From positions 124,001 to 188,000 of the IMG/VR virus record IMGVR_UViG_3300001782_000005: 64,000 bases of DNA. The stretch is one strand, 5' to 3'. The translations under genes were made by a program, and so were the position numbers. Position 1 is the first letter of the stretch; each line of letters opens with the position of its first letter. Positions 38,160 to 50,436 of the stretch are shown one piece after another. The notes under the pieces were generated by a model. That model was not told where the DNA came from and made no database searches. It saw nothing but the letters and a program-made list of their open reading frames with translations.

Positions 38160-38461
38160 CCAGGTCCAGCTACAGAATATTTATAACTACAACCTTTACA
38201 TCTATAAATATTTCCCAATGCTGGCGGTTGACAATCACGAAACCATTCGGTTTCTCCGGTTCTTTGAATAATTCCCCCACAGTATGGACACATACCCGGA
38301 TATATATCACTTATGTAGCTAACTTGTGCCTGGTCAACTTTATCACACCTCTCTTGGCAAGTCTGAATCAATATGCATCCGGTACATGGATATTTGAATC
38401 TTCTAATTTCCCACTCGTATTTTAACTTCTTTATCCACATTCTAAACCGATAACCCACCAT
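38153..38461 (-). CDS. Cx2Cx5Cx3C plus Zn-ribbon protein (tandem paralog)
   Basis: YPCTGCILIQTCQERC; CPYC...CKGC; start at ATG 38461 after AAGGAGG. Confidence 0.6.
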   Translation of the reverse strand: MVGYRFRMWIKKLKYEWEIRRFKYPCTGCILIQTCQERCDKVDQAQVSYISDIYPGMCPYCGGIIQRTGETEWFRDCQPPALGNIYRCKGCSYKYSVAGPGW

Positions 38462-38505
38462 ACCCTCCTTCCAATTAAAAAAATCAACAAGTCTATTATT
38501 CATAA

Positions 38506-38519
38506 ATTAATATATATAG
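38506..38519 (-). promoter_or_regulatory. Putative early promoter CTATATATATTAAT (copy 3)
   Basis: Exact motif at the major strand switch. Confidence 0.75.
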
Positions 38520-38624
38520 TGGATTGAAGGTTTAAAAATAAGAAAATTTCTACTGAATGAGATACTTTTTTAGAATATAGTAACAAATGAATGATAGAAT
38601 CAGTTTGGAGGGAGTAGTGCAAAT

Positions 38625-39569
38625 ATGAATATAAAAATTGAACGATCTATACGACAAGCATTGTGTCCATGTAGGTATGGTTCGTGGGGTAGTAAATTCA
38701 AATGTAGCTCCTTAAATGGTTCAAAACCATTATTTAATATAGATCATATGCTACTAGTTAACATTATTCAAGATATGTTAATTCAGAATTATTGGGATGG
38801 GAGGAACAACGGAGAAATACCCAAATCCTGGAAAAATCCAATAGTTTGGAAAGGTATTAAACCATTGATACATAGAGGAGATTGGTTCAATATATATAAT
38901 GGTACATCAACTGAGCGTTCAAAAGATTATACTTATACCTATCTATATAATAAATATCCCTTTCTAAAGGAGCGTATAAAACATGCCGGATCATTGAAAA
39001 AGTTGATTCTAGAGCTTAATAATATGAGATTCAACTTAGTTATGAGAGTAAGAGCAGTATATCATGCGAAAAAGAAGATGTACAATTATCAAACTCATAA
39101 AGATTATAATAAAGAATATCCTGAATACGATAGTTTCTTTATGAATACAATGAATAAACCAGCATCAAAATTATTTAACTTTGAGATAACCAAGGAAGAA
39201 AAATTTAGTAGAGGTGGTATATCAGATATTGAATTTCATATAAAGATGAACAATATATACTTCTATTCAATGTACCAGGGTGCCATGTATGTAACTATCG
39301 ACTGGATACCCGAGGAGATATATACCCTGAAGATGAACAATTATAGTAAATTTCTTTATATACTAATGCTAGCAGGGAAGGTAAAAAAGGACTATGAGTA
39401 TAACTTGGGTGAAATAGTTGAAAAACTACAGCTGAAACCTAATCAAAAGAAGAGTCAATTATGTATGCTCATTGATAGGTACTTAGATGATCTGGTGCAA
39501 AATAACTTTATCGAAGTAGAATCAAGGGGTGGATTTAAGAATAGAAGATATATTATAAATAGAAAGTGA
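38625..39569 (+). CDS. Putative replication initiator / winged-helix DNA-binding protein
   Basis: Basic; C-terminal wHTH-like (L.EI.EKL...YLDDLV...FIEV...G....Y.I); directly followed by tandem repeats. Confidence 0.5.
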   Translation: MNIKIERSIRQALCPCRYGSWGSKFKCSSLNGSKPLFNIDHMLLVNIIQDMLIQNYWDGRNNGEIPKSWKNPIVWKGIKPLIHRGDWFNIYNGTSTERSKDYTYTYLYNKYPFLKERIKHAGSLKKLILELNNMRFNLVMRVRAVYHAKKKMYNYQTHKDYNKEYPEYDSFFMNTMNKPASKLFNFEITKEEKFSRGGISDIEFHIKMNNIYFYSMYQGAMYVTIDWIPEEIYTLKMNNYSKFLYILMLAGKVKKDYEYNLGEIVEKLQLKPNQKKSQLCMLIDRYLDDLVQNNFIEVESRGGFKNRRYIINRK

Positions 39570-39572
39570 GGT

Positions 39573-39666
39573 AAAAAGTATATTCATTACCCAAAAAGTA
39601 TATTCATTACCCAAAAAGTATATTCATTACCCAAAAAGTATATTCATTACCCAAAAAGTATATTCA
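39573..39666 (+). repeat. Perfect 20-bp tandem direct repeats (iteron/centromere-like)
   Basis: AAAAAGTATATTCATTACCC x4 plus a 14-bp partial copy, no spacers. Confidence 0.95.
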
Positions 39667-39848
39667 AGAGGCCATAAAAATTTGAATAAAATTAAAGATT
39701 TACAGAACCACATTTTCCCTGATTTATGATAATGATTTATGACACTCCGGTGTGGTTCATTGGTTTCACCACACCAAAGTGCTTTTGGGCATACGCCTTA
39801 TACGTTAAAGAACAAATCAAAAAGAAAAACAAAAAAGGAGATCAACGA

Positions 39849-41840
39849 ATGTACAATGGAGAAGAAACAGTATGGGTTAATCAAAAGGAATTTCAGTACA
39901 AAGATGTAGAATATGGTTCAGCTTCAACAATGGATATTTCAACTTCAATTAATACGAAAGATTTCAAATATTTTTCACAGGTGACTCTAAACATCTCAAT
40001 TACTTCAGATTCGGATAGAAGTAGGAGAAATTGTAATTTAAATATTAATGATGTTAGGAGTTTGTTCAACTCTTTCTTAGAGGTTTCAAGAGATTATAAG
40101 GCCGCTTATGAAAAAGAAGAACCATTCAAAATCTCAAATAAATATGGTAATAAATACCTTGAGATTATGTATAAACTTTCAAGAACTCAAGTAAGATGTG
40201 TCGTGTTAACTATTATCCACAGTGAGAATGATTATGGTCAAATAGTAATTCCTTTAGAAGAATTTGAGACAATAGTTCATATATTCTCATTGTTTCGTCA
40301 TAGTTATCACATATTTAGAAAAGAACTCAAAGATCAAATCATTAATCATAAGATAGTTGAAAATACTTCAGCAATGGAAAGAGCTATTAGGACTTTACCT
40401 TCCTCAATTTCCACATCTCAGGTAGAATTTCCAAGTTTTAATATTGAAACACCAATCGAGTCTACTGAAGAGCAGAATGATTTTGAGAAATATGTTAAAG
40501 ATGAAGAGGTTCTAGAAAAACCTCTTCCGGAAGAAAAGAGGATAGAACAACAACAAGAGGTAGAGGCACCTCCAGAAATAAATAGTGAATTTATTCGTGA
40601 TGTTTTAAAGTTGGATATGGGAAATTATGAGAGATTACTTGCAGCAGCATCTGGAGAGTATAATACAACTGAGGCGATATTAGAAAGGTTAAAAGAAACT
40701 ATAACACAATCTGAAGATTATGAATTTTTGCCGGGAATATCTGAGAGTGATTATAAATCTGCTCTATATATTTCAAGGTTTAATTATTTAACTGGATTCA
40801 AATTATATTCCAGAGATAAAATTCAAATTCCAACTTCTATCGCTCCGATTAAATATAGACCCGATAAATCCAAAGTTCAAGATTTAAACGTTGAAGTAGC
40901 TTATGATCTATTGACAATAAGTGCTTTTGTAAAATGTTTAGTTCAGAAACTAGGTCAAAAGATTGCAGATAGTCAGAGTAATAAATCACTATTCTATTAT
41001 GCACATAGGTGCTTTACTGATATTTTATGCTTTAGTTTTCTGACTGATGTGGAAGGAAGTATTGTAAAGAATTGTGTAATGACAAGATTTCGAGATTATG
41101 AGAAGATAGGATTTTTCAAGCAATATCAAGATCTTCTTCTTGTAAATAATTGTACTTCTGTCGTTGAGCAGGATATACAGTCATTTCTGGATCTTTTAGT
41201 TGAGAAGGTTTTACCTGCTGAGCTCTATATTAATAATTTACATAATAAACTCCATGAAGATAAATTATTGCTACCTGCTACAAATAAGGTTAGTTTAGAA
41301 CAAATTACAAATGAGGTAGTTAAGATTAACGTTCTTCATTTTGTTAAGGAATTGAATGTTTATGAGATTGATTTAGCACAACTAAATCAGACTATTAATA
41401 TGCAAATTCCTCCTGAGTTATTTGATTTATTACGTGCTCCGAAAAGTTTGAGAAAACCGGTGGAGAAGACAAAATATAACTCTAATCTCCATTGGTATTT
41501 TAATAAATATCAAGGTGACCTTCCAAAGGGTCATGAAGATAAATTAATTAGTTATTTTGAACAACTTGGAGATAATGATTTTCCATTTGATAATCCTCCT
41601 ATAAATTTGGAAGATTTAGAGGAGAGATATATACGAGCAATATATCATCATAATAGTTTGGAGAAGGATCAGAGGAACTTAAAACGAAATGACTTTATCA
41701 CGTATGTTCATGAAGAATGTACTATGTCGAAAAGGAATATTCTTGATATATATAAGGCCAAAGAAGAAGAAGAAGAAAAAGAATTGAAAAAAGATATAGT
41801 TGAAGATTTTGGTGCTATGTTGGAGGCCATGGAAGAATAG
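39849..41840 (+). CDS. Large hypothetical protein; N-terminus possibly a Whirly/PC4-like ssDNA-binding fold; acidic tail
   Basis: Start reassigned to ATG 39849 (AAAGGAG RBS); two strands-then-helix units; EEEEE...MEE end. Confidence 0.45.
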   Translation: MYNGEETVWVNQKEFQYKDVEYGSASTMDISTSINTKDFKYFSQVTLNISITSDSDRSRRNCNLNINDVRSLFNSFLEVSRDYKAAYEKEEPFKISNKYGNKYLEIMYKLSRTQVRCVVLTIIHSENDYGQIVIPLEEFETIVHIFSLFRHSYHIFRKELKDQIINHKIVENTSAMERAIRTLPSSISTSQVEFPSFNIETPIESTEEQNDFEKYVKDEEVLEKPLPEEKRIEQQQEVEAPPEINSEFIRDVLKLDMGNYERLLAAASGEYNTTEAILERLKETITQSEDYEFLPGISESDYKSALYISRFNYLTGFKLYSRDKIQIPTSIAPIKYRPDKSKVQDLNVEVAYDLLTISAFVKCLVQKLGQKIADSQSNKSLFYYAHRCFTDILCFSFLTDVEGSIVKNCVMTRFRDYEKIGFFKQYQDLLLVNNCTSVVEQDIQSFLDLLVEKVLPAELYINNLHNKLHEDKLLLPATNKVSLEQITNEVVKINVLHFVKELNVYEIDLAQLNQTINMQIPPELFDLLRAPKSLRKPVEKTKYNSNLHWYFNKYQGDLPKGHEDKLISYFEQLGDNDFPFDNPPINLEDLEERYIRAIYHHNSLEKDQRNLKRNDFITYVHEECTMSKRNILDIYKAKEEEEEKELKKDIVEDFGAMLEAMEE

Positions 41841-44700: not shown

Positions 44701-45804
44701 ATGAGTGATGAAGAAAAGAAAGAGGAGATAGTTGAGCAGCCTGAGATAGTACCTCACCCGCCTCCACCTCGACCAGAGAAAAAAGATAATAGATTATTTA
44801 TTGGTCTTGATTGTGGGACAATGAATATCTGCTGTGCCAGAAATGATGTAGACCAGATTAGAATTACAAGAAATGTCTTTCTGCCAATTAGCGACGATTC
44901 TGTTTCAATGTCTGAGTTATCAAATATTAGCTATGTGAAATCAGATGATGGAGAATTGTTTATTATAGGAGAAGATGCGTTTAAATTTGCAAATATATTT
45001 GGTCAAGCAGTTTCTCGACCAATGGAGAAGGGTTTAATCTCTCCAAAAGAGATATCTGCAATTGATGTTCTCACATTAATAGTCAAAGATCTAATAGGTC
45101 CAGTGCAGAATAGAGATGTTTATTGTGCTTATAGTATCCCTGCTGAAGCGATTGACGAAACTAGATCTGTTATCTATCATACAAGAGTATTTGGTCGAAT
45201 TTTGGGTGCCCTTGGCGTCAATCATCGCCCAGTTAACGAAGGTGCAGCAATTATATACTCAGAGTGTAGTAAGGAGAGGTTTTCTGGAGTTGGAATATCT
45301 TTTGGTGCAGGTATGTGTAATGTTGCAATAATGTATAAGGGAGTGGAAGTTTTAAAGTTCTCTACTTCTAGAAGTGGGGATTATATTGATAATTCCGTTT
45401 CCGAATCTCTAAATATAGTTCCAAACAGAGTGACTTCAATAAAAGAAAGACGTCTTGATCTAACTAAAGGTTTTATGCAAGAGAAGGACAAAAAAATAAG
45501 GCGAGTTATTGAGGCACTTGAGTATTATTATTCTGCTCTTATAAACTATACAATAAAAAAGATAATTAATGAATTTAATGAGAAGGTTGACATTGAAGTT
45601 GACGAGAATTTGCCAGTTATTATATCTGGAGGAACGTCAATGCCGAATGGTTTTCTTGAGTTGTTTAAGTCTATGATATCTCAATATGAGTTGCCATTTG
45701 GTGTTAGTGAAGTAAGGAGGGCTAAGAATCCACTTACTTCTGTTGCAAACGGTTTACTTGTTTTAACTGTTGCTGATTTCTCAGGAACAAAAATAAAAAG
45801 ATAG
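44701..45804 (+). CDS. Actin-fold ATPase (MreB/ParM/MamK superfamily)
   Basis: Phosphate-1 IGLDCGT, connect-1 NEGAA, phosphate-2 SFGAG, adenosine ISGGTS, connect-2 NPLTSVANG. Confidence 0.85.
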   Translation: MSDEEKKEEIVEQPEIVPHPPPPRPEKKDNRLFIGLDCGTMNICCARNDVDQIRITRNVFLPISDDSVSMSELSNISYVKSDDGELFIIGEDAFKFANIFGQAVSRPMEKGLISPKEISAIDVLTLIVKDLIGPVQNRDVYCAYSIPAEAIDETRSVIYHTRVFGRILGALGVNHRPVNEGAAIIYSECSKERFSGVGISFGAGMCNVAIMYKGVEVLKFSTSRSGDYIDNSVSESLNIVPNRVTSIKERRLDLTKGFMQEKDKKIRRVIEALEYYYSALINYTIKKIINEFNEKVDIEVDENLPVIISGGTSMPNGFLELFKSMISQYELPFGVSEVRRAKNPLTSVANGLLVLTVADFSGTKIKR

Positions 45805-49683: not shown

Positions 49684-50436
49684 ATGGCCCTTCCAATTGA
49701 TGCAGTTTACGCAGGGACTAATGCCAAGATAGCAGATGTACAGGCAAAATATAATGATTGTCTTACCTTATTCCCCGATATTCAAACACAATTAGCAATA
49801 GTCTCAGCAAATGTGACAACTATATATAATACTGCTGTTGATATGATCAGTGAAGAATTTAGTACTCTACTAGAGAAATACGGAATTAATTGTGCATCCA
49901 GAGCATATTTTGGTCAAGATGCTGATGACTTAATAACTGATAGATATGACATATTTGAGAAAGCACAAAGCGGTGACATATATAATCCAATTAATGATCA
50001 ACTACAGTATATGCTAGATCAAACAGGACCTTTTGACTGTAGTATACCTGCTATAGAAGCTTGGGTGAGAAGTTTATTTGATAATTTATCTGATAAGACA
50101 GATGACCGTAAAGATCTTATTGATGCAGCAAAACAATTTGTAGATGATGCAAAAGAATTTGTCGATGATGTAAACCGTGCTTTAGGTTTCCTTGGTGAGT
50201 GGATAGGATGTGGAGTACAGATGTTTAATAATTTCTATGATCTTGGACCTGCTATGGAAACTTATAATACATATGCCAATCAAACTTTTACTGCAGTTGA
50301 TAATGCAAAACAAATAACCGATAATCCAACTGAAATTTATAATTTATCAGTAGAGGAAACAAAATCCACTCTAGGTTTACAAACTAGAATGGATAACCTC
50401 AAGAGTGAAGCTAGTTCTATACTAAGTTTATTTTAG
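49684..50436 (+). CDS. Helical hypothetical protein, probably virion-associated
   Basis: Acidic and helical; adjacent to the PAAR gene. Confidence 0.4.
   Translation: MALPIDAVYAGTNAKIADVQAKYNDCLTLFPDIQTQLAIVSANVTTIYNTAVDMISEEFSTLLEKYGINCASRAYFGQDADDLITDRYDIFEKAQSGDIYNPINDQLQYMLDQTGPFDCSIPAIEAWVRSLFDNLSDKTDDRKDLIDAAKQFVDDAKEFVDDVNRALGFLGEWIGCGVQMFNNFYDLGPAMETYNTYANQTFTAVDNAKQITDNPTEIYNLSVEETKSTLGLQTRMDNLKSEASSILSLF

What the first reader, a model, noticed from the sequence alone, without database searches (positions are those of the whole stretch)
38556..39780. Plasmid-style iteron replicon at the strand switch of a phage with its own T4-like replisome
Seen: a wHTH-like gene is followed 3 bp after its stop by 4.7 perfect 20-bp repeats, then an AT-rich tract and a GGTGTGGT/ACCACACC hairpin. 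A degenerate inverted copy of the repeat core (AATGAGATACTTTTT at 38556-38570, versus reverse complement AATGAATATACTTTTT) lies in the same gene's upstream region. Coding strand flips here. Known: Rep-iteron origins have repeats of about 20 bp, an AT-rich unwinding element and Rep autorepression at related operators. Inference: this is the origin with an autoregulated initiator, suggesting a phage-plasmid-like state. It could instead be the centromere for the actin-like protein.
Basis: partly seen in the sequence, partly recalled or inferred. Interest (0 to 1): 0.75.

Follow-up and report, generated by a model that had tools for sequence, protein, structure and literature searches.

The report
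Rep-iteron replication origin in jumbo phage
A 277-kb uncultured marine phage that carries its own T4-like DNA replication machinery also encodes a very divergent plasmid-type initiator protein next to its own binding-site repeats, which is most likely the phage's replication origin and gives a testable origin candidate for this group of giant phages.

Summary
A unique, perfect 20-bp x 4.7 array (39573-39666) starts 3 bp after the stop of a 314-aa ORF (38625-39569), at the main strand switch of a complete 277-kb phage genome.

The ORF matches no Pfam or PHROG family. An 11-sequence AlphaFold model (pLDDT 92.5) has the two-winged-helix fold of iteron plasmid initiators over its whole length: Z 13.1 to RepE54, 10.5 to pi and to RctB. 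The next unrelated hit scores 5.3.

Relatives at 24-56% identity keep the same synteny. Most carry 20-21-bp repeats at or just after the stop codon, with a different repeat sequence in each lineage. Three features follow in the same order: an AT-rich tract, short GAT-type tandem repeats found in all eight loci, and a hairpin with lineage-specific stems that looks like a terminator.

This is best read as a Rep-iteron origin.

Not supported:
- The upstream "operator": it is conserved whatever the iteron sequence, and is significant only in this phage (p about 0.03).
- A phage-plasmid state: no ParA, ParB or integrase was found.
- An actin centromere.

GC skew bottoms out here, but it follows coding strand in every block, so it is not independent evidence. 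Binding and origin activity are untested.

The parts
38502..38520 (+). Phage promoter-like motif (ATAAATTAATATATATAGT), about 105 bp upstream of the rep-like start codon
   Evidence: The core TTAATATATATAG recurs about 17 times in the genome. Copies are mostly intergenic and lie 16-110 bp upstream of + strand genes, including the PolB gene. It is conserved in L004, L007, L014, L021 and L019.
38556..38570 (.). It lies in the conserved 5' leader and is not supported as a cognate operator.
   Evidence: Shuffle p is 0.026 here, but 0.23-0.88 in relatives. The sequence is conserved regardless of iteron sequence.
38625..39569 (+). Rep-like initiator gene: 314 aa, two winged-helix domains (WH1-WH2) with long beta-ribbon insertions
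   Evidence: AlphaFold2 on an 11-sequence alignment gives pLDDT 92.5 and pTM 0.89. VIA-align gives Z 13.1 to RepE54, 10.5 to pi (2nra) and 10.5 to RctB (5tbf), with the next unrelated hit at 5.3. Foldseek against PDB, Swiss-Prot and AFDB clusters returns almost only replication initiators. The ESM Atlas gives the same answer. No Pfam or PHROG sequence match.
39570..39669 (+). Iteron array: five cores at exact 20-bp spacing (TRF 39573-39666, 4.7 perfect copies)
   Evidence: Analogous 20-21-bp arrays of different sequence begin at or within 11 bp of the stop codon in L007, L015, L004, L009 and L019.
39674..39703 (.). AT-rich, easily melted tract (candidate DNA unwinding element)
   Evidence: Nearest-neighbour stability is in the lowest 0.18% of 30-bp windows genome-wide.
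39720..39742 (+). Short tandem repeats TGATTTA/TGATAA (period 6-7, about 3.4 copies): candidate repeated element of the unwinding region
   Evidence: TRF. A run of at least three GAT spaced 5-9 nt lies 123-196 bp after the stop codon in all 8 loci, including the distant L011, L015 and L019. Background is 0.23 runs per kb per strand.
39743..39789 (+). GC-rich hairpin (14-nt arms, 39743-39781) followed by CTTTTGGG: probable intrinsic terminator of the rep transcript
   Evidence: Most relatives have a stable hairpin here with a different stem sequence and a U-rich tail (z -3.3 to -6.9 in five of six, -1.1 in L021). It is not called by the simple terminator scan and has no Rfam match.
39776..39797 (+). 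Conserved box AAAGTGCTTTTGGGCATACGCC, overlapping the hairpin's 3' arm and a second small stem
   Evidence: Conserved in L004, L007 and L014. Unique in the genome.
39849..41840 (+). 663-aa ORF of unknown function, always the next gene after the origin-like region in the phage relatives
   Evidence: Synteny in L004, L007, L015, L019 and L021. No Pfam or PHROG match. One weak Atlas lead to a Whirly/PurA-like ssDNA-binding fold in the N-terminal 150 aa.

Best explanation
The segment 38.5-39.8 kb is a Rep-iteron replication origin module of a complete 277-kb jumbo phage.

Shown:
- The 314-aa protein has the WH1-WH2 fold of iteron-binding initiators (RepE, pi, RctB core, TrfA, Pgp2). It best matches the monomeric, iteron-bound RepE54 conformation.
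- Five 20-bp-spaced repeats abut its stop codon.
- Relatives keep the gene, its position, and repeats of the same period but lineage-specific sequence.
- An easily melted AT tract, conserved short GAT-type tandem repeats and a structure-conserved hairpin follow in fixed order.

Inferred:
- Rep monomers occupy the five iterons on one face of the helix (20 bp is about two turns) and distort the adjacent AT tract.
- The short repeats are held as single strands by the conserved face of Rep, as described for RepE and TrfA (PMC10602881, PMC4081077).
- The complex recruits a replicative helicase, here probably the phage's own DnaB-like helicase. The phage primase, clamp loader and PolB then follow.
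- The gene is transcribed from a phage promoter class shared with the PolB gene. The transcript runs through the iterons and the AT tract and ends at the hairpin, so transcription may also help opening.
- Nearly all genes point away from this site and converge about 131 and 146 kb away. That layout fits bidirectional replication from here.
For: Fold:
- Model pLDDT 92.5, pTM 0.89.
- Z 13.1 to RepE54 (200 of 216 residues, rmsd 3.2, model 1-314), 10.5 to pi, 10.5 to RctB, then a drop to 5.3.
- All 22 significant Swiss-Prot hits are replication initiators or the initiator-related Pgp2. Nearly all named AFDB cluster hits are Rep, RepB, TrfA or RPA.
- An independent ESM Atlas search by features and by structure points to the RPA, Rep3, RepC and TrfA families.
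- Pgp2 was assigned as an initiator from the same three PDB matches at the same Z range, and that assignment was then supported genetically (PMC11895440).

DNA:
- The array is perfect and unique.
- Arrays of 20-21-bp period but different sequence start at the stop codon in L007, L015, L004, L009 and L019.
- AT tract in the lowest 0.18% of stability.
- GAT-type short repeats 123-196 bp after the stop in 8 of 8 loci, against a background of 0.23 per kb.

Context:
- The gene sits at the divergence from the operon with the Dda-like helicase, clamp loader, primase and UvsX.
- PolB and a DnaB-like helicase lie elsewhere in the genome.
- The cumulative GC-skew minimum is at genome 163 kb.
- Gene orientation diverges here.
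- Its promoter motif is shared with the PolB gene.
Against: - No experiment: neither binding nor origin firing is shown.
- No sequence-level membership in any Rep family.
- GC skew follows coding strand in every block, so the skew minimum is not independent of the strand switch.
- Two relatives (L014, L021) have only weak periodic repeats.
- The four perfect copies could reflect recent slippage.
- There is no conserved DnaA box and no operator-like inverted repeat, both common in iteron plasmids.
- The iterons lie downstream of rep, not upstream as in most plasmids.
- T4-type phages can initiate without any initiator protein.
- Complex prediction returned no usable result.
Confidence: 0.68

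Rival explanations
1. The module is a dedicated plasmid-prophage replicon. It maintains the phage as a low-copy plasmid (phage-plasmid or carrier state), while lytic replication starts elsewhere or by recombination, as with P1 RepA versus RepL.
For: The initiator fold is that of plasmid Reps. No integrase was found, so any lysogeny would have to be extrachromosomal. An actin-like gene of a kind that could in principle segregate DNA lies in the same rightward gene block. The genome has UvsX and Dda for recombination-dependent replication.
Against: No ParA, ParB or StbA/ParM partition genes were found. The protein has no homologue in 72,556 plasmids. The module sits at the head of the replication gene cluster and uses the same promoter motif as the PolB gene. 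Genome-wide gene orientation is centred on it. Only 11 homologues were found in 1.84 billion representative proteins, and every one with enough flanking sequence lies in a phage-like context.
Confidence: 0.12
2. The protein is a Rep-fold transcription regulator and the array is its operator. Bound protein would block or time read-through from the rep gene into the downstream 663-aa gene operon.
For: RepE-type proteins also act as repressors when dimeric. The array lies between two co-oriented genes and upstream of a terminator-like hairpin. The C-terminal domain gives weak hits to repressor-type winged helices.
Against: The model matches monomeric, iteron-bound RepE54 (Z 12-13) much better than the dimeric repressor form (2z9o, Z 6.8). 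Five direct repeats in helical phase, followed by an AT tract and conserved short repeats, is origin architecture rather than operator architecture. No inverted repeats were found.
Confidence: 0.1
3. The array is a centromere, and the protein is the adaptor for the actin-like (Volactin-family) filament encoded 5 kb downstream. This would be a ParMRC-like segregation or positioning system.
For: An actin-like gene at 44701-45804 lies in the same strand block (PF25216, E 1.8e-70). Centromeres are also tandem direct repeats.
Against: The adaptor fold is a full-length Rep initiator, not a ParR-type ribbon-helix-helix. Five genes separate it from the actin gene. No StbA/ParM signature was found. Homologous actins occur in two huge phages where no homologue of this protein is detected.
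Confidence: 0.05
4. The array is a functionless recent slippage expansion, or an assembly artefact, next to an unrelated DNA-binding protein.
For: The four copies are 100% identical, which suggests recent expansion. One close relative (L014) has no clear array. De Bruijn unitigs break inside it.
Against: The same copy number appears in three assemblies. Arrays of the same period and position but different sequence are present in at least five diverged relatives. Unitig depth is consistent with about 4-6 copies in three of four runs.
Confidence: 0.03

Closest known systems
RepE of mini-F with oriS (iteron plasmid initiator; PDB 1REP, 8AAN)
   Same: Two winged-helix domains, with the best structural match over the whole protein (Z 12-13). 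Direct repeats of about 20 bp in helical phase lie next to an AT-rich unwinding region that contains short repeated motifs (8-mers in oriS; PMC10602881).
   Different: About 8% sequence identity and no Pfam Rep_3 match. The phage protein has about 100 extra residues, including long beta-ribbons. The iterons lie downstream of the gene and are contiguous at 20 bp. There is no inverted-repeat operator and no conserved DnaA box. The replicon is a 277-kb phage with its own replisome.
Pgp2 of the Chlamydia plasmid
   Same: An orphan by sequence, recognised as an initiator only from an AlphaFold model that matches pi, RepE and RctB at Z 10.8-13.1 (PMC11895440). It ranks 2nd to 6th in my Swiss-Prot fold search. 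It has extra beta-hairpin elements near the DNA-binding surface and tandem repeats of about 22 bp at its origin (the repeat length is from my own knowledge).
   Different: A small 7.5-kb plasmid that depends on a plasmid-encoded helicase partner. There is no sequence similarity.
Phage lambda O protein with ori-lambda
   Same: A phage-encoded initiator binding four or five iterons of about 19-20 bp next to an AT-rich region. Transcription through or near the origin contributes to firing (established knowledge).
   Different: The lambda iterons lie inside the O gene. O has one N-terminal winged helix plus a P-binding domain and recruits host DnaB. Only weak, single-domain structural hits to GpO-like proteins were found (E 0.036).
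RctB with ori2 of Vibrio chromosome 2
   Same: RctB domains 2-3 are the best Foldseek PDB hit (E 1.5e-5; Z 10.5). This is a plasmid-type initiator controlling a large replicon with replichore-like organisation.
   Different: RctB has four domains, binds 11/12-mers and 39-mers, and is methylation dependent. It is cellular, not viral.
Phage T4 origins (oriF, oriG)
   Same: The same kind of replisome genes are present: PolB, clamp loader, primase, Dda, UvsX. A promoter-driven transcript runs into an unwinding element.
   Different: T4 origins work through R-loops without a sequence-specific initiator protein or iterons (established knowledge).

Membership tests
Iteron-type Rep initiators (WH1-WH2: RepE, pi, pPS10 RepA, TrfA, RctB core, Pgp2) | Two tandem winged-helix domains with the Rep-specific arrangement | tested here: met
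   Model pLDDT 92.5. Z 13.1, 10.5 and 10.5 to RepE54, pi and RctB over residues 1-314, with the next unrelated hit at 5.3. Searches agree.
Iteron-type Rep initiators (WH1-WH2: RepE, pi, pPS10 RepA, TrfA, RctB core, Pgp2) | Sequence match to a curated Rep family model (Rep3_N PF01051, RPA PF10134, TrfA, RepC, RepA_C) | tested here: not met
   No Pfam hit above E 0.03 for any of 11 family members. The PF01051 search of the genome was empty. The PDB profile search was empty. PHROGs gave nothing.
Iteron-type Rep initiators (WH1-WH2: RepE, pi, pPS10 RepA, TrfA, RctB core, Pgp2) | Three or more direct repeats of about 17-22 bp in helical phase next to the gene | tested here: met
   Five cores at 20-bp spacing, 3 bp after the stop codon. 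Relatives have 20-21-bp periods.
Iteron-type Rep initiators (WH1-WH2: RepE, pi, pPS10 RepA, TrfA, RctB core, Pgp2) | Repeat sequence specific to each initiator lineage (protein-site co-variation) | tested here: met
   Each lineage has a different unit: AAAAAGTATATTCATTACCC in the window, GGATTGCTAAATCTCTATTGA in L007, AAAATGTATAAAACGCATATA in L015, CCTGGAAGTTGGAATGAAAAA in L009 and TCAACTTTAATGGATTTGAG in L019. This is qualitative only. L014 and L021 are unclear.
Iteron-type Rep initiators (WH1-WH2: RepE, pi, pPS10 RepA, TrfA, RctB core, Pgp2) | Adjacent AT-rich unwinding element with short repeated motifs | tested here: met
   The 30-bp tract is in the lowest 0.18% of stability. Short GAT-type tandem repeats are conserved in 8 of 8 loci. 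This is sequence evidence only; melting was not shown.
Iteron-type Rep initiators (WH1-WH2: RepE, pi, pPS10 RepA, TrfA, RctB core, Pgp2) | Autorepression at an inverted half-iteron operator in the rep promoter | tested here: not met
   The upstream site is conserved irrespective of iteron sequence. Similarity to the cognate iteron gives p 0.026 here but 0.23-0.88 in three relatives. There is no inverted repeat apart from the palindromic promoter motif.
Iteron-type Rep initiators (WH1-WH2: RepE, pi, pPS10 RepA, TrfA, RctB core, Pgp2) | Host DnaA box(es) in the origin (many but not all members) | tested here: inconclusive
   One perfect TTATCCACA lies 194 bp upstream of the start codon, inside the neighbouring gene. 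It is not conserved in relatives.
Iteron-type Rep initiators (WH1-WH2: RepE, pi, pPS10 RepA, TrfA, RctB core, Pgp2) | Specific binding to the repeats and origin firing | not testable with these tools
EMSA and replication assays are needed.
ParMRC-type actin partition systems | Centromere repeats, a ParM/StbA-family actin and a small ribbon-helix-helix adaptor in one compact operon | tested here: not met
   No StbA_N match in the genome. The actin is Volactin-family and lies 5 kb away. The repeat-adjacent protein has a Rep fold.
Phage-plasmids (P1, N15, SSU5 types) | Plasmid replication module together with partition genes (ParA/ParB or equivalents) | tested here: not met
   The searches for AAA_31 (ParA), ParB_N and StbA_N were all empty in the complete genome. 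Repressor and antirepressor genes were not searched.

The most novel reading that the evidence does not exclude
A clade of marine jumbo phages with a complete T4-type replisome does not start replication the T4 way. It uses a previously unrecognised family of plasmid-type WH1-WH2 initiators at a single iteron origin, and the 277-kb genome is laid out in two replichore-like arms around it. The Rep protein would then have to load a phage-encoded DnaB-like helicase rather than the host one. The same module, with the nearby actin-like gene, could allow an episomal carrier state.
Probability: 0.3. Interest if true: 0.7.

Novelty: new member of a known kind. Interest (0 to 1): 0.55.

Why it matters
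Replication origins of jumbo phages are largely unmapped, and T4-type replisomes are usually discussed without a sequence-specific initiator. Here a compact set of parts can be synthesised and tested directly, even though the host is uncultured: an initiator with a confident model, five cognate sites, an unwinding element and a terminator.

The protein family is invisible to sequence profiles. Only 11 relatives were found in 1.84 billion representative proteins, and none carries a name in the searched databases. It therefore adds a new branch to the Rep superfamily and gives annotators a marker for origins in this phage clade.

The natural series of relatives with different iterons but the same scaffold is a ready-made data set for studying initiator-site specificity.

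Tried and rejected
- Sequence searches for the protein gave no named relative: Pfam, PHROGs, a PDB profile search, tblastn against phages and plasmids, and the word-index search with single sequence and profile.
- The single-sequence AlphaFold model was useless (pLDDT 37). Only the 11-sequence alignment gave a confident model.
- Rfam found nothing in 38300-40000. The consensus terminator scan did not call the hairpin, because its loop is 11 nt and its T run is short.
- Complex prediction with iteron DNA was accepted but not folded, so it gives no evidence either way.
- DnaA boxes: one perfect box is nearby but is not conserved in relatives, so I rejected it as part of the module.
- GC skew as independent origin evidence: rejected, because skew follows coding strand in every block.
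- The upstream 'operator': rejected on comparative grounds.
- Logan contigs cannot resolve the copy number. Unitigs break in the array and only a depth ratio is available.
- The metagenome scan added no new relatives.
- The Atlas lead for the 663-aa neighbour (Whirly-like) is below the reliable score range.
Full report
**Setting**

The window is bases 124001-188000 of a single 277,131-bp virus record. The contig ends overlap by 94 bp, and IMG/VR classes it as complete with direct terminal repeats. GC content is 36.7%.

The genome carries a T4-like set of replication genes:
- In the leftward block next to the finding: a Dda-like helicase, clamp loader, primase, UvsX-like recombinase, ribonucleotide reductase and exonucleases.
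- Elsewhere in the genome: a family-B polymerase and a DnaB-like helicase.

Public runs that hold the sequence are marine sediment and seawater metagenomes.

**Observation check**

- Tandem Repeats Finder reports 39573-39666, period 20, 4.7 copies, 100% identity, score 188. The next best array in the window scores 73.
- The unit is unique in the genome, even with two mismatches.
- The ORF 38625-39569 ends with TGA at 39567-39569, so the array starts 3 bp later. Read in the phase starting at 39570, there are five AAAAAGTATATTCA cores spaced exactly 20 bp apart.
- The array is followed by a 30-bp tract (39674-39703) that is among the 0.18% least stable 30-bp windows of the genome.
- Next comes a short TGATTTA-type tandem repeat at 39720-39742.
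- Then comes a hairpin with 14-nt arms at 39743-39781, which contains the GGTGTGGT/ACCACACC pair.
- The coding strand switches between 38503 and 38625.
- Two further assemblies encoding an identical protein carry the same 4.7 copies.
- In four runs the k-mer unitig of the repeat has about 1.5-5 times the depth of its flanks, and 3-5 times in three of them. That is what about 4-6 copies would give. The unitigs themselves break in the array, and raw reads were not available.

**The protein**

It has no significant Pfam or PHROG match. The only signal is a weak C-terminal winged-helix hit (E 0.036).

An exhaustive HMMER search of 1.84 billion representatives found 11 relatives, all unnamed. tblastn found none in 50,697 phage or 72,556 plasmid records.

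A single-sequence model failed. An 11-sequence alignment (A2) gave a confident AlphaFold2 model with pLDDT 92.5 and pTM 0.89.

Fold comparisons:
- Foldseek against the PDB returned RctB domains 2-3, dozens of RepE54 entries and the Rep-DUE complexes.
- VIA-align gave Z 13.1 to RepE54 (200 of 216 residues, rmsd 3.2 Å, spanning model residues 1-314). It gave 10.5 to the pi-iteron complex and 10.5 to RctB. The dimeric repressor form of RepE scored 6.8.
- After these the scores drop to 5.3, for hits that cover only the last winged helix.
- The 22 significant Swiss-Prot matches are RepE, RepFIB RepA, P1-type RepA, TrfA, chlamydial Pgp2 and similar proteins.
- Named AFDB cluster hits are almost all replication initiators.
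- The ESM Atlas independently pointed to the RPA, Rep3, RepC and TrfA clusters, both by language-model features and by structure.
- Pgp2 was assigned as an initiator on the same three PDB matches at Z 10.8-13.1, and that assignment was then supported genetically (PMC11895440).

I conclude that the protein has the WH1-WH2 initiator fold. At sequence level it is a new family.

**Comparative anatomy**

Contigs encoding relatives at 24-56% identity keep the same layout:
- a leftward operon with the Dda-like helicase;
- a divergent intergenic region;
- the rep-like gene as the first or second rightward gene;
- 150-700 bp of non-coding DNA;
- then a 634-694-aa ORF, a 203-aa ORF and a 406-aa ORF;
- where the contig reaches far enough (L004, L005, L021): NUDIX, a 156-aa ORF and an actin-like gene.

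Repeats begin at or within 11 bp of the stop codon in most relatives, but with a different sequence in each:

| Locus | Repeats after the stop codon |
|---|---|
| L007 | four 21-bp units |
| L015 | five 21-bp cores, the first overlapping the stop |
| L004 | degenerate 20-23-bp units |
| L009 | a 21-bp unit starts again just before the contig ends |
| L019 | two tandem copies plus one 107 bp further on |
| L014, L021 | only weak periodicity |

Two short contigs end at or just after the stop codon, as expected if a repeat breaks assembly.

Three elements downstream are conserved rather than lineage-specific:
- A run of three to six GAT-containing 6-9-bp units lies 123-196 bp after the stop in all eight loci. 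This includes the distant L011, L015 and L019. The background is 0.23 such runs per kb per strand.
- A stable hairpin whose stem sequence differs in every lineage but keeps its position and a U-rich tail. The z-scores are -2.3 to -6.9 in six of the seven loci folded, and -1.1 in L021.
- In the close relatives, the box AAAGTGCTTTTGGCATACGCC.

I read the hairpin as the terminator of the rep transcript. It is not an origin element in itself.

**The upstream site**

The 121-bp leader is more conserved than the coding sequence. It contains a motif, TTAATATATATAG, that recurs about 17 times in the genome. Copies are mostly intergenic and lie 16-110 bp upstream of + strand genes, including the polymerase gene. 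I therefore take it as a phage promoter class.

- It needs a gap and a mismatch to match the iteron.
- Seven other genomic sites match as well.
- Its shuffle p is 0.026.
- The same sequence is present in relatives whose iterons are unrelated. In those relatives, similarity between leader and cognate repeat is at chance level (p 0.23-0.88).
- No operator-like inverted repeat was found.

Autoregulation through this site is therefore not supported, though it is not excluded.

**Skew and genome layout**

Cumulative GC skew has its global minimum at genome 163 kb, exactly at the locus. But skew has the sign of the coding strand in essentially every block, so this is not independent evidence.

Gene orientation itself is organised around the site. 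About 122 of the 131 kb to the left are leftward genes, and about 130 of the 146 kb to the right (wrapping to 31 kb) are rightward. This is compatible with two replichores, or simply with the transcription programme.

**Other readings**

- *Phage-plasmid.* The complete genome has no match to ParA (AAA_31), ParB_N, StbA_N or tyrosine integrase models.
- *Actin centromere.* The actin-like gene (Volactin family, E 1.8e-70) is five genes away. Its only homologues among deposited phages are in two huge uncultured phages in which the rep-like protein is not detectable. The repeat-adjacent protein is an initiator by fold, not a ParR-like adaptor.
- *Regulator.* The model fits the monomeric iteron-bound form far better than the dimeric repressor form, and the DNA architecture is origin-like.
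- *DnaA boxes.* One perfect box lies 194 bp upstream of the start codon but is not conserved.

**Mechanism proposed**

The steps after the fold and the DNA anatomy are inferred.
1. Rep monomers occupy the five in-phase iterons.
2. The adjacent AT tract opens.
3. The conserved short repeats are captured as single strands, as in the loop-back model for RepE and TrfA (PMC10602881; PMC4081077).
4. A helicase is loaded, plausibly the phage's own DnaB-like enzyme, followed by the phage primase, clamp loader and polymerase.

**Verdict**

This is a real and well-defined feature. It is a very divergent new family of a known kind of system (a Rep-iteron origin) in an unusual carrier: a jumbo phage with a T4-type replisome. 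Its extensions (autoregulation, plasmid state, centromere) do not gain support.

Noticed in passing
window 38502-38520, and about 16 other sites genome-wide (e.g. window 1137, 11728, 53302, 62578): A recurrent motif A-n-TTAATATATATAG(A/T). It is mostly intergenic and lies 16-110 bp upstream of + strand genes, including the rep-like gene and the PolB gene. It is conserved in related phages and is probably a phage-specific promoter class. A few copies lie on the + strand inside the long leftward block.
   Followed up: partly
whole genome (G000:C1), divergence at 162.5 kb = window 38.5 kb, convergence near 31 kb: Nearly all genes point away from the rep locus and converge about 131 and 146 kb away on the circular map. 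This is a replichore-like layout. GC skew follows coding strand in every block.
   Followed up: partly
window 44701-45804 (+): Actin-like protein of the Volactin family (PF25216, E 1.8e-70), syntenic in relatives L004, L005 and L021. Its only tblastn homologues among deposited phages are in two huge uncultured phages, LR745208 (485 kb) and LR756511 (595 kb). Its role in a phage is unknown.
   Followed up: partly
window 39849-41840 (+): A 663-aa ORF that is always the next gene after the origin-like region in the phage relatives. It has no family match. A weak Atlas lead suggests a Whirly/PurA-like ssDNA-binding fold in the first 150 residues or so, which would fit a replication role.
   Followed up: partly
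window 38431-38439 and 40213-40221: Two of the genome's eight perfect DnaA boxes (TTATCCACA; about 3.4 expected by composition) flank the locus. The upstream one, and any box within about 600 bp of the rep gene, is not conserved in relatives.
   Followed up: yes
window 39682-39693: An inverted, degenerate copy of the iteron core (TTGAATAAAATT, facing AAGTATATTCAA) lies inside the AT-rich tract. Chance is not excluded in such AT-rich sequence.
   Followed up: no
L011:2890-3300 and L018:4155-4429: Two distant homologues (30-32% identity) lie in different gene contexts. L011 has an 800-bp non-coding stretch with CCATAT/ATATGG motifs, a GATTAA x3 repeat and a 27-bp direct repeat. L018 has a GC-rich flank and an HU-fusion gene upstream. 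So the family is not confined to one phage clade.
   Followed up: no
window 50128-50174: The second-strongest tandem repeat in the window (21 bp x 2.2, 88% matches, TRF score 73). It lies inside the ORF 49684-50436.
   Followed up: no
G000:C1 ends (1-94 and 277038-277131): The last 94 bases repeat the first 94. This is either an assembly-type circular overlap or a short direct terminal repeat, so the true genome ends are not known.
   Followed up: no
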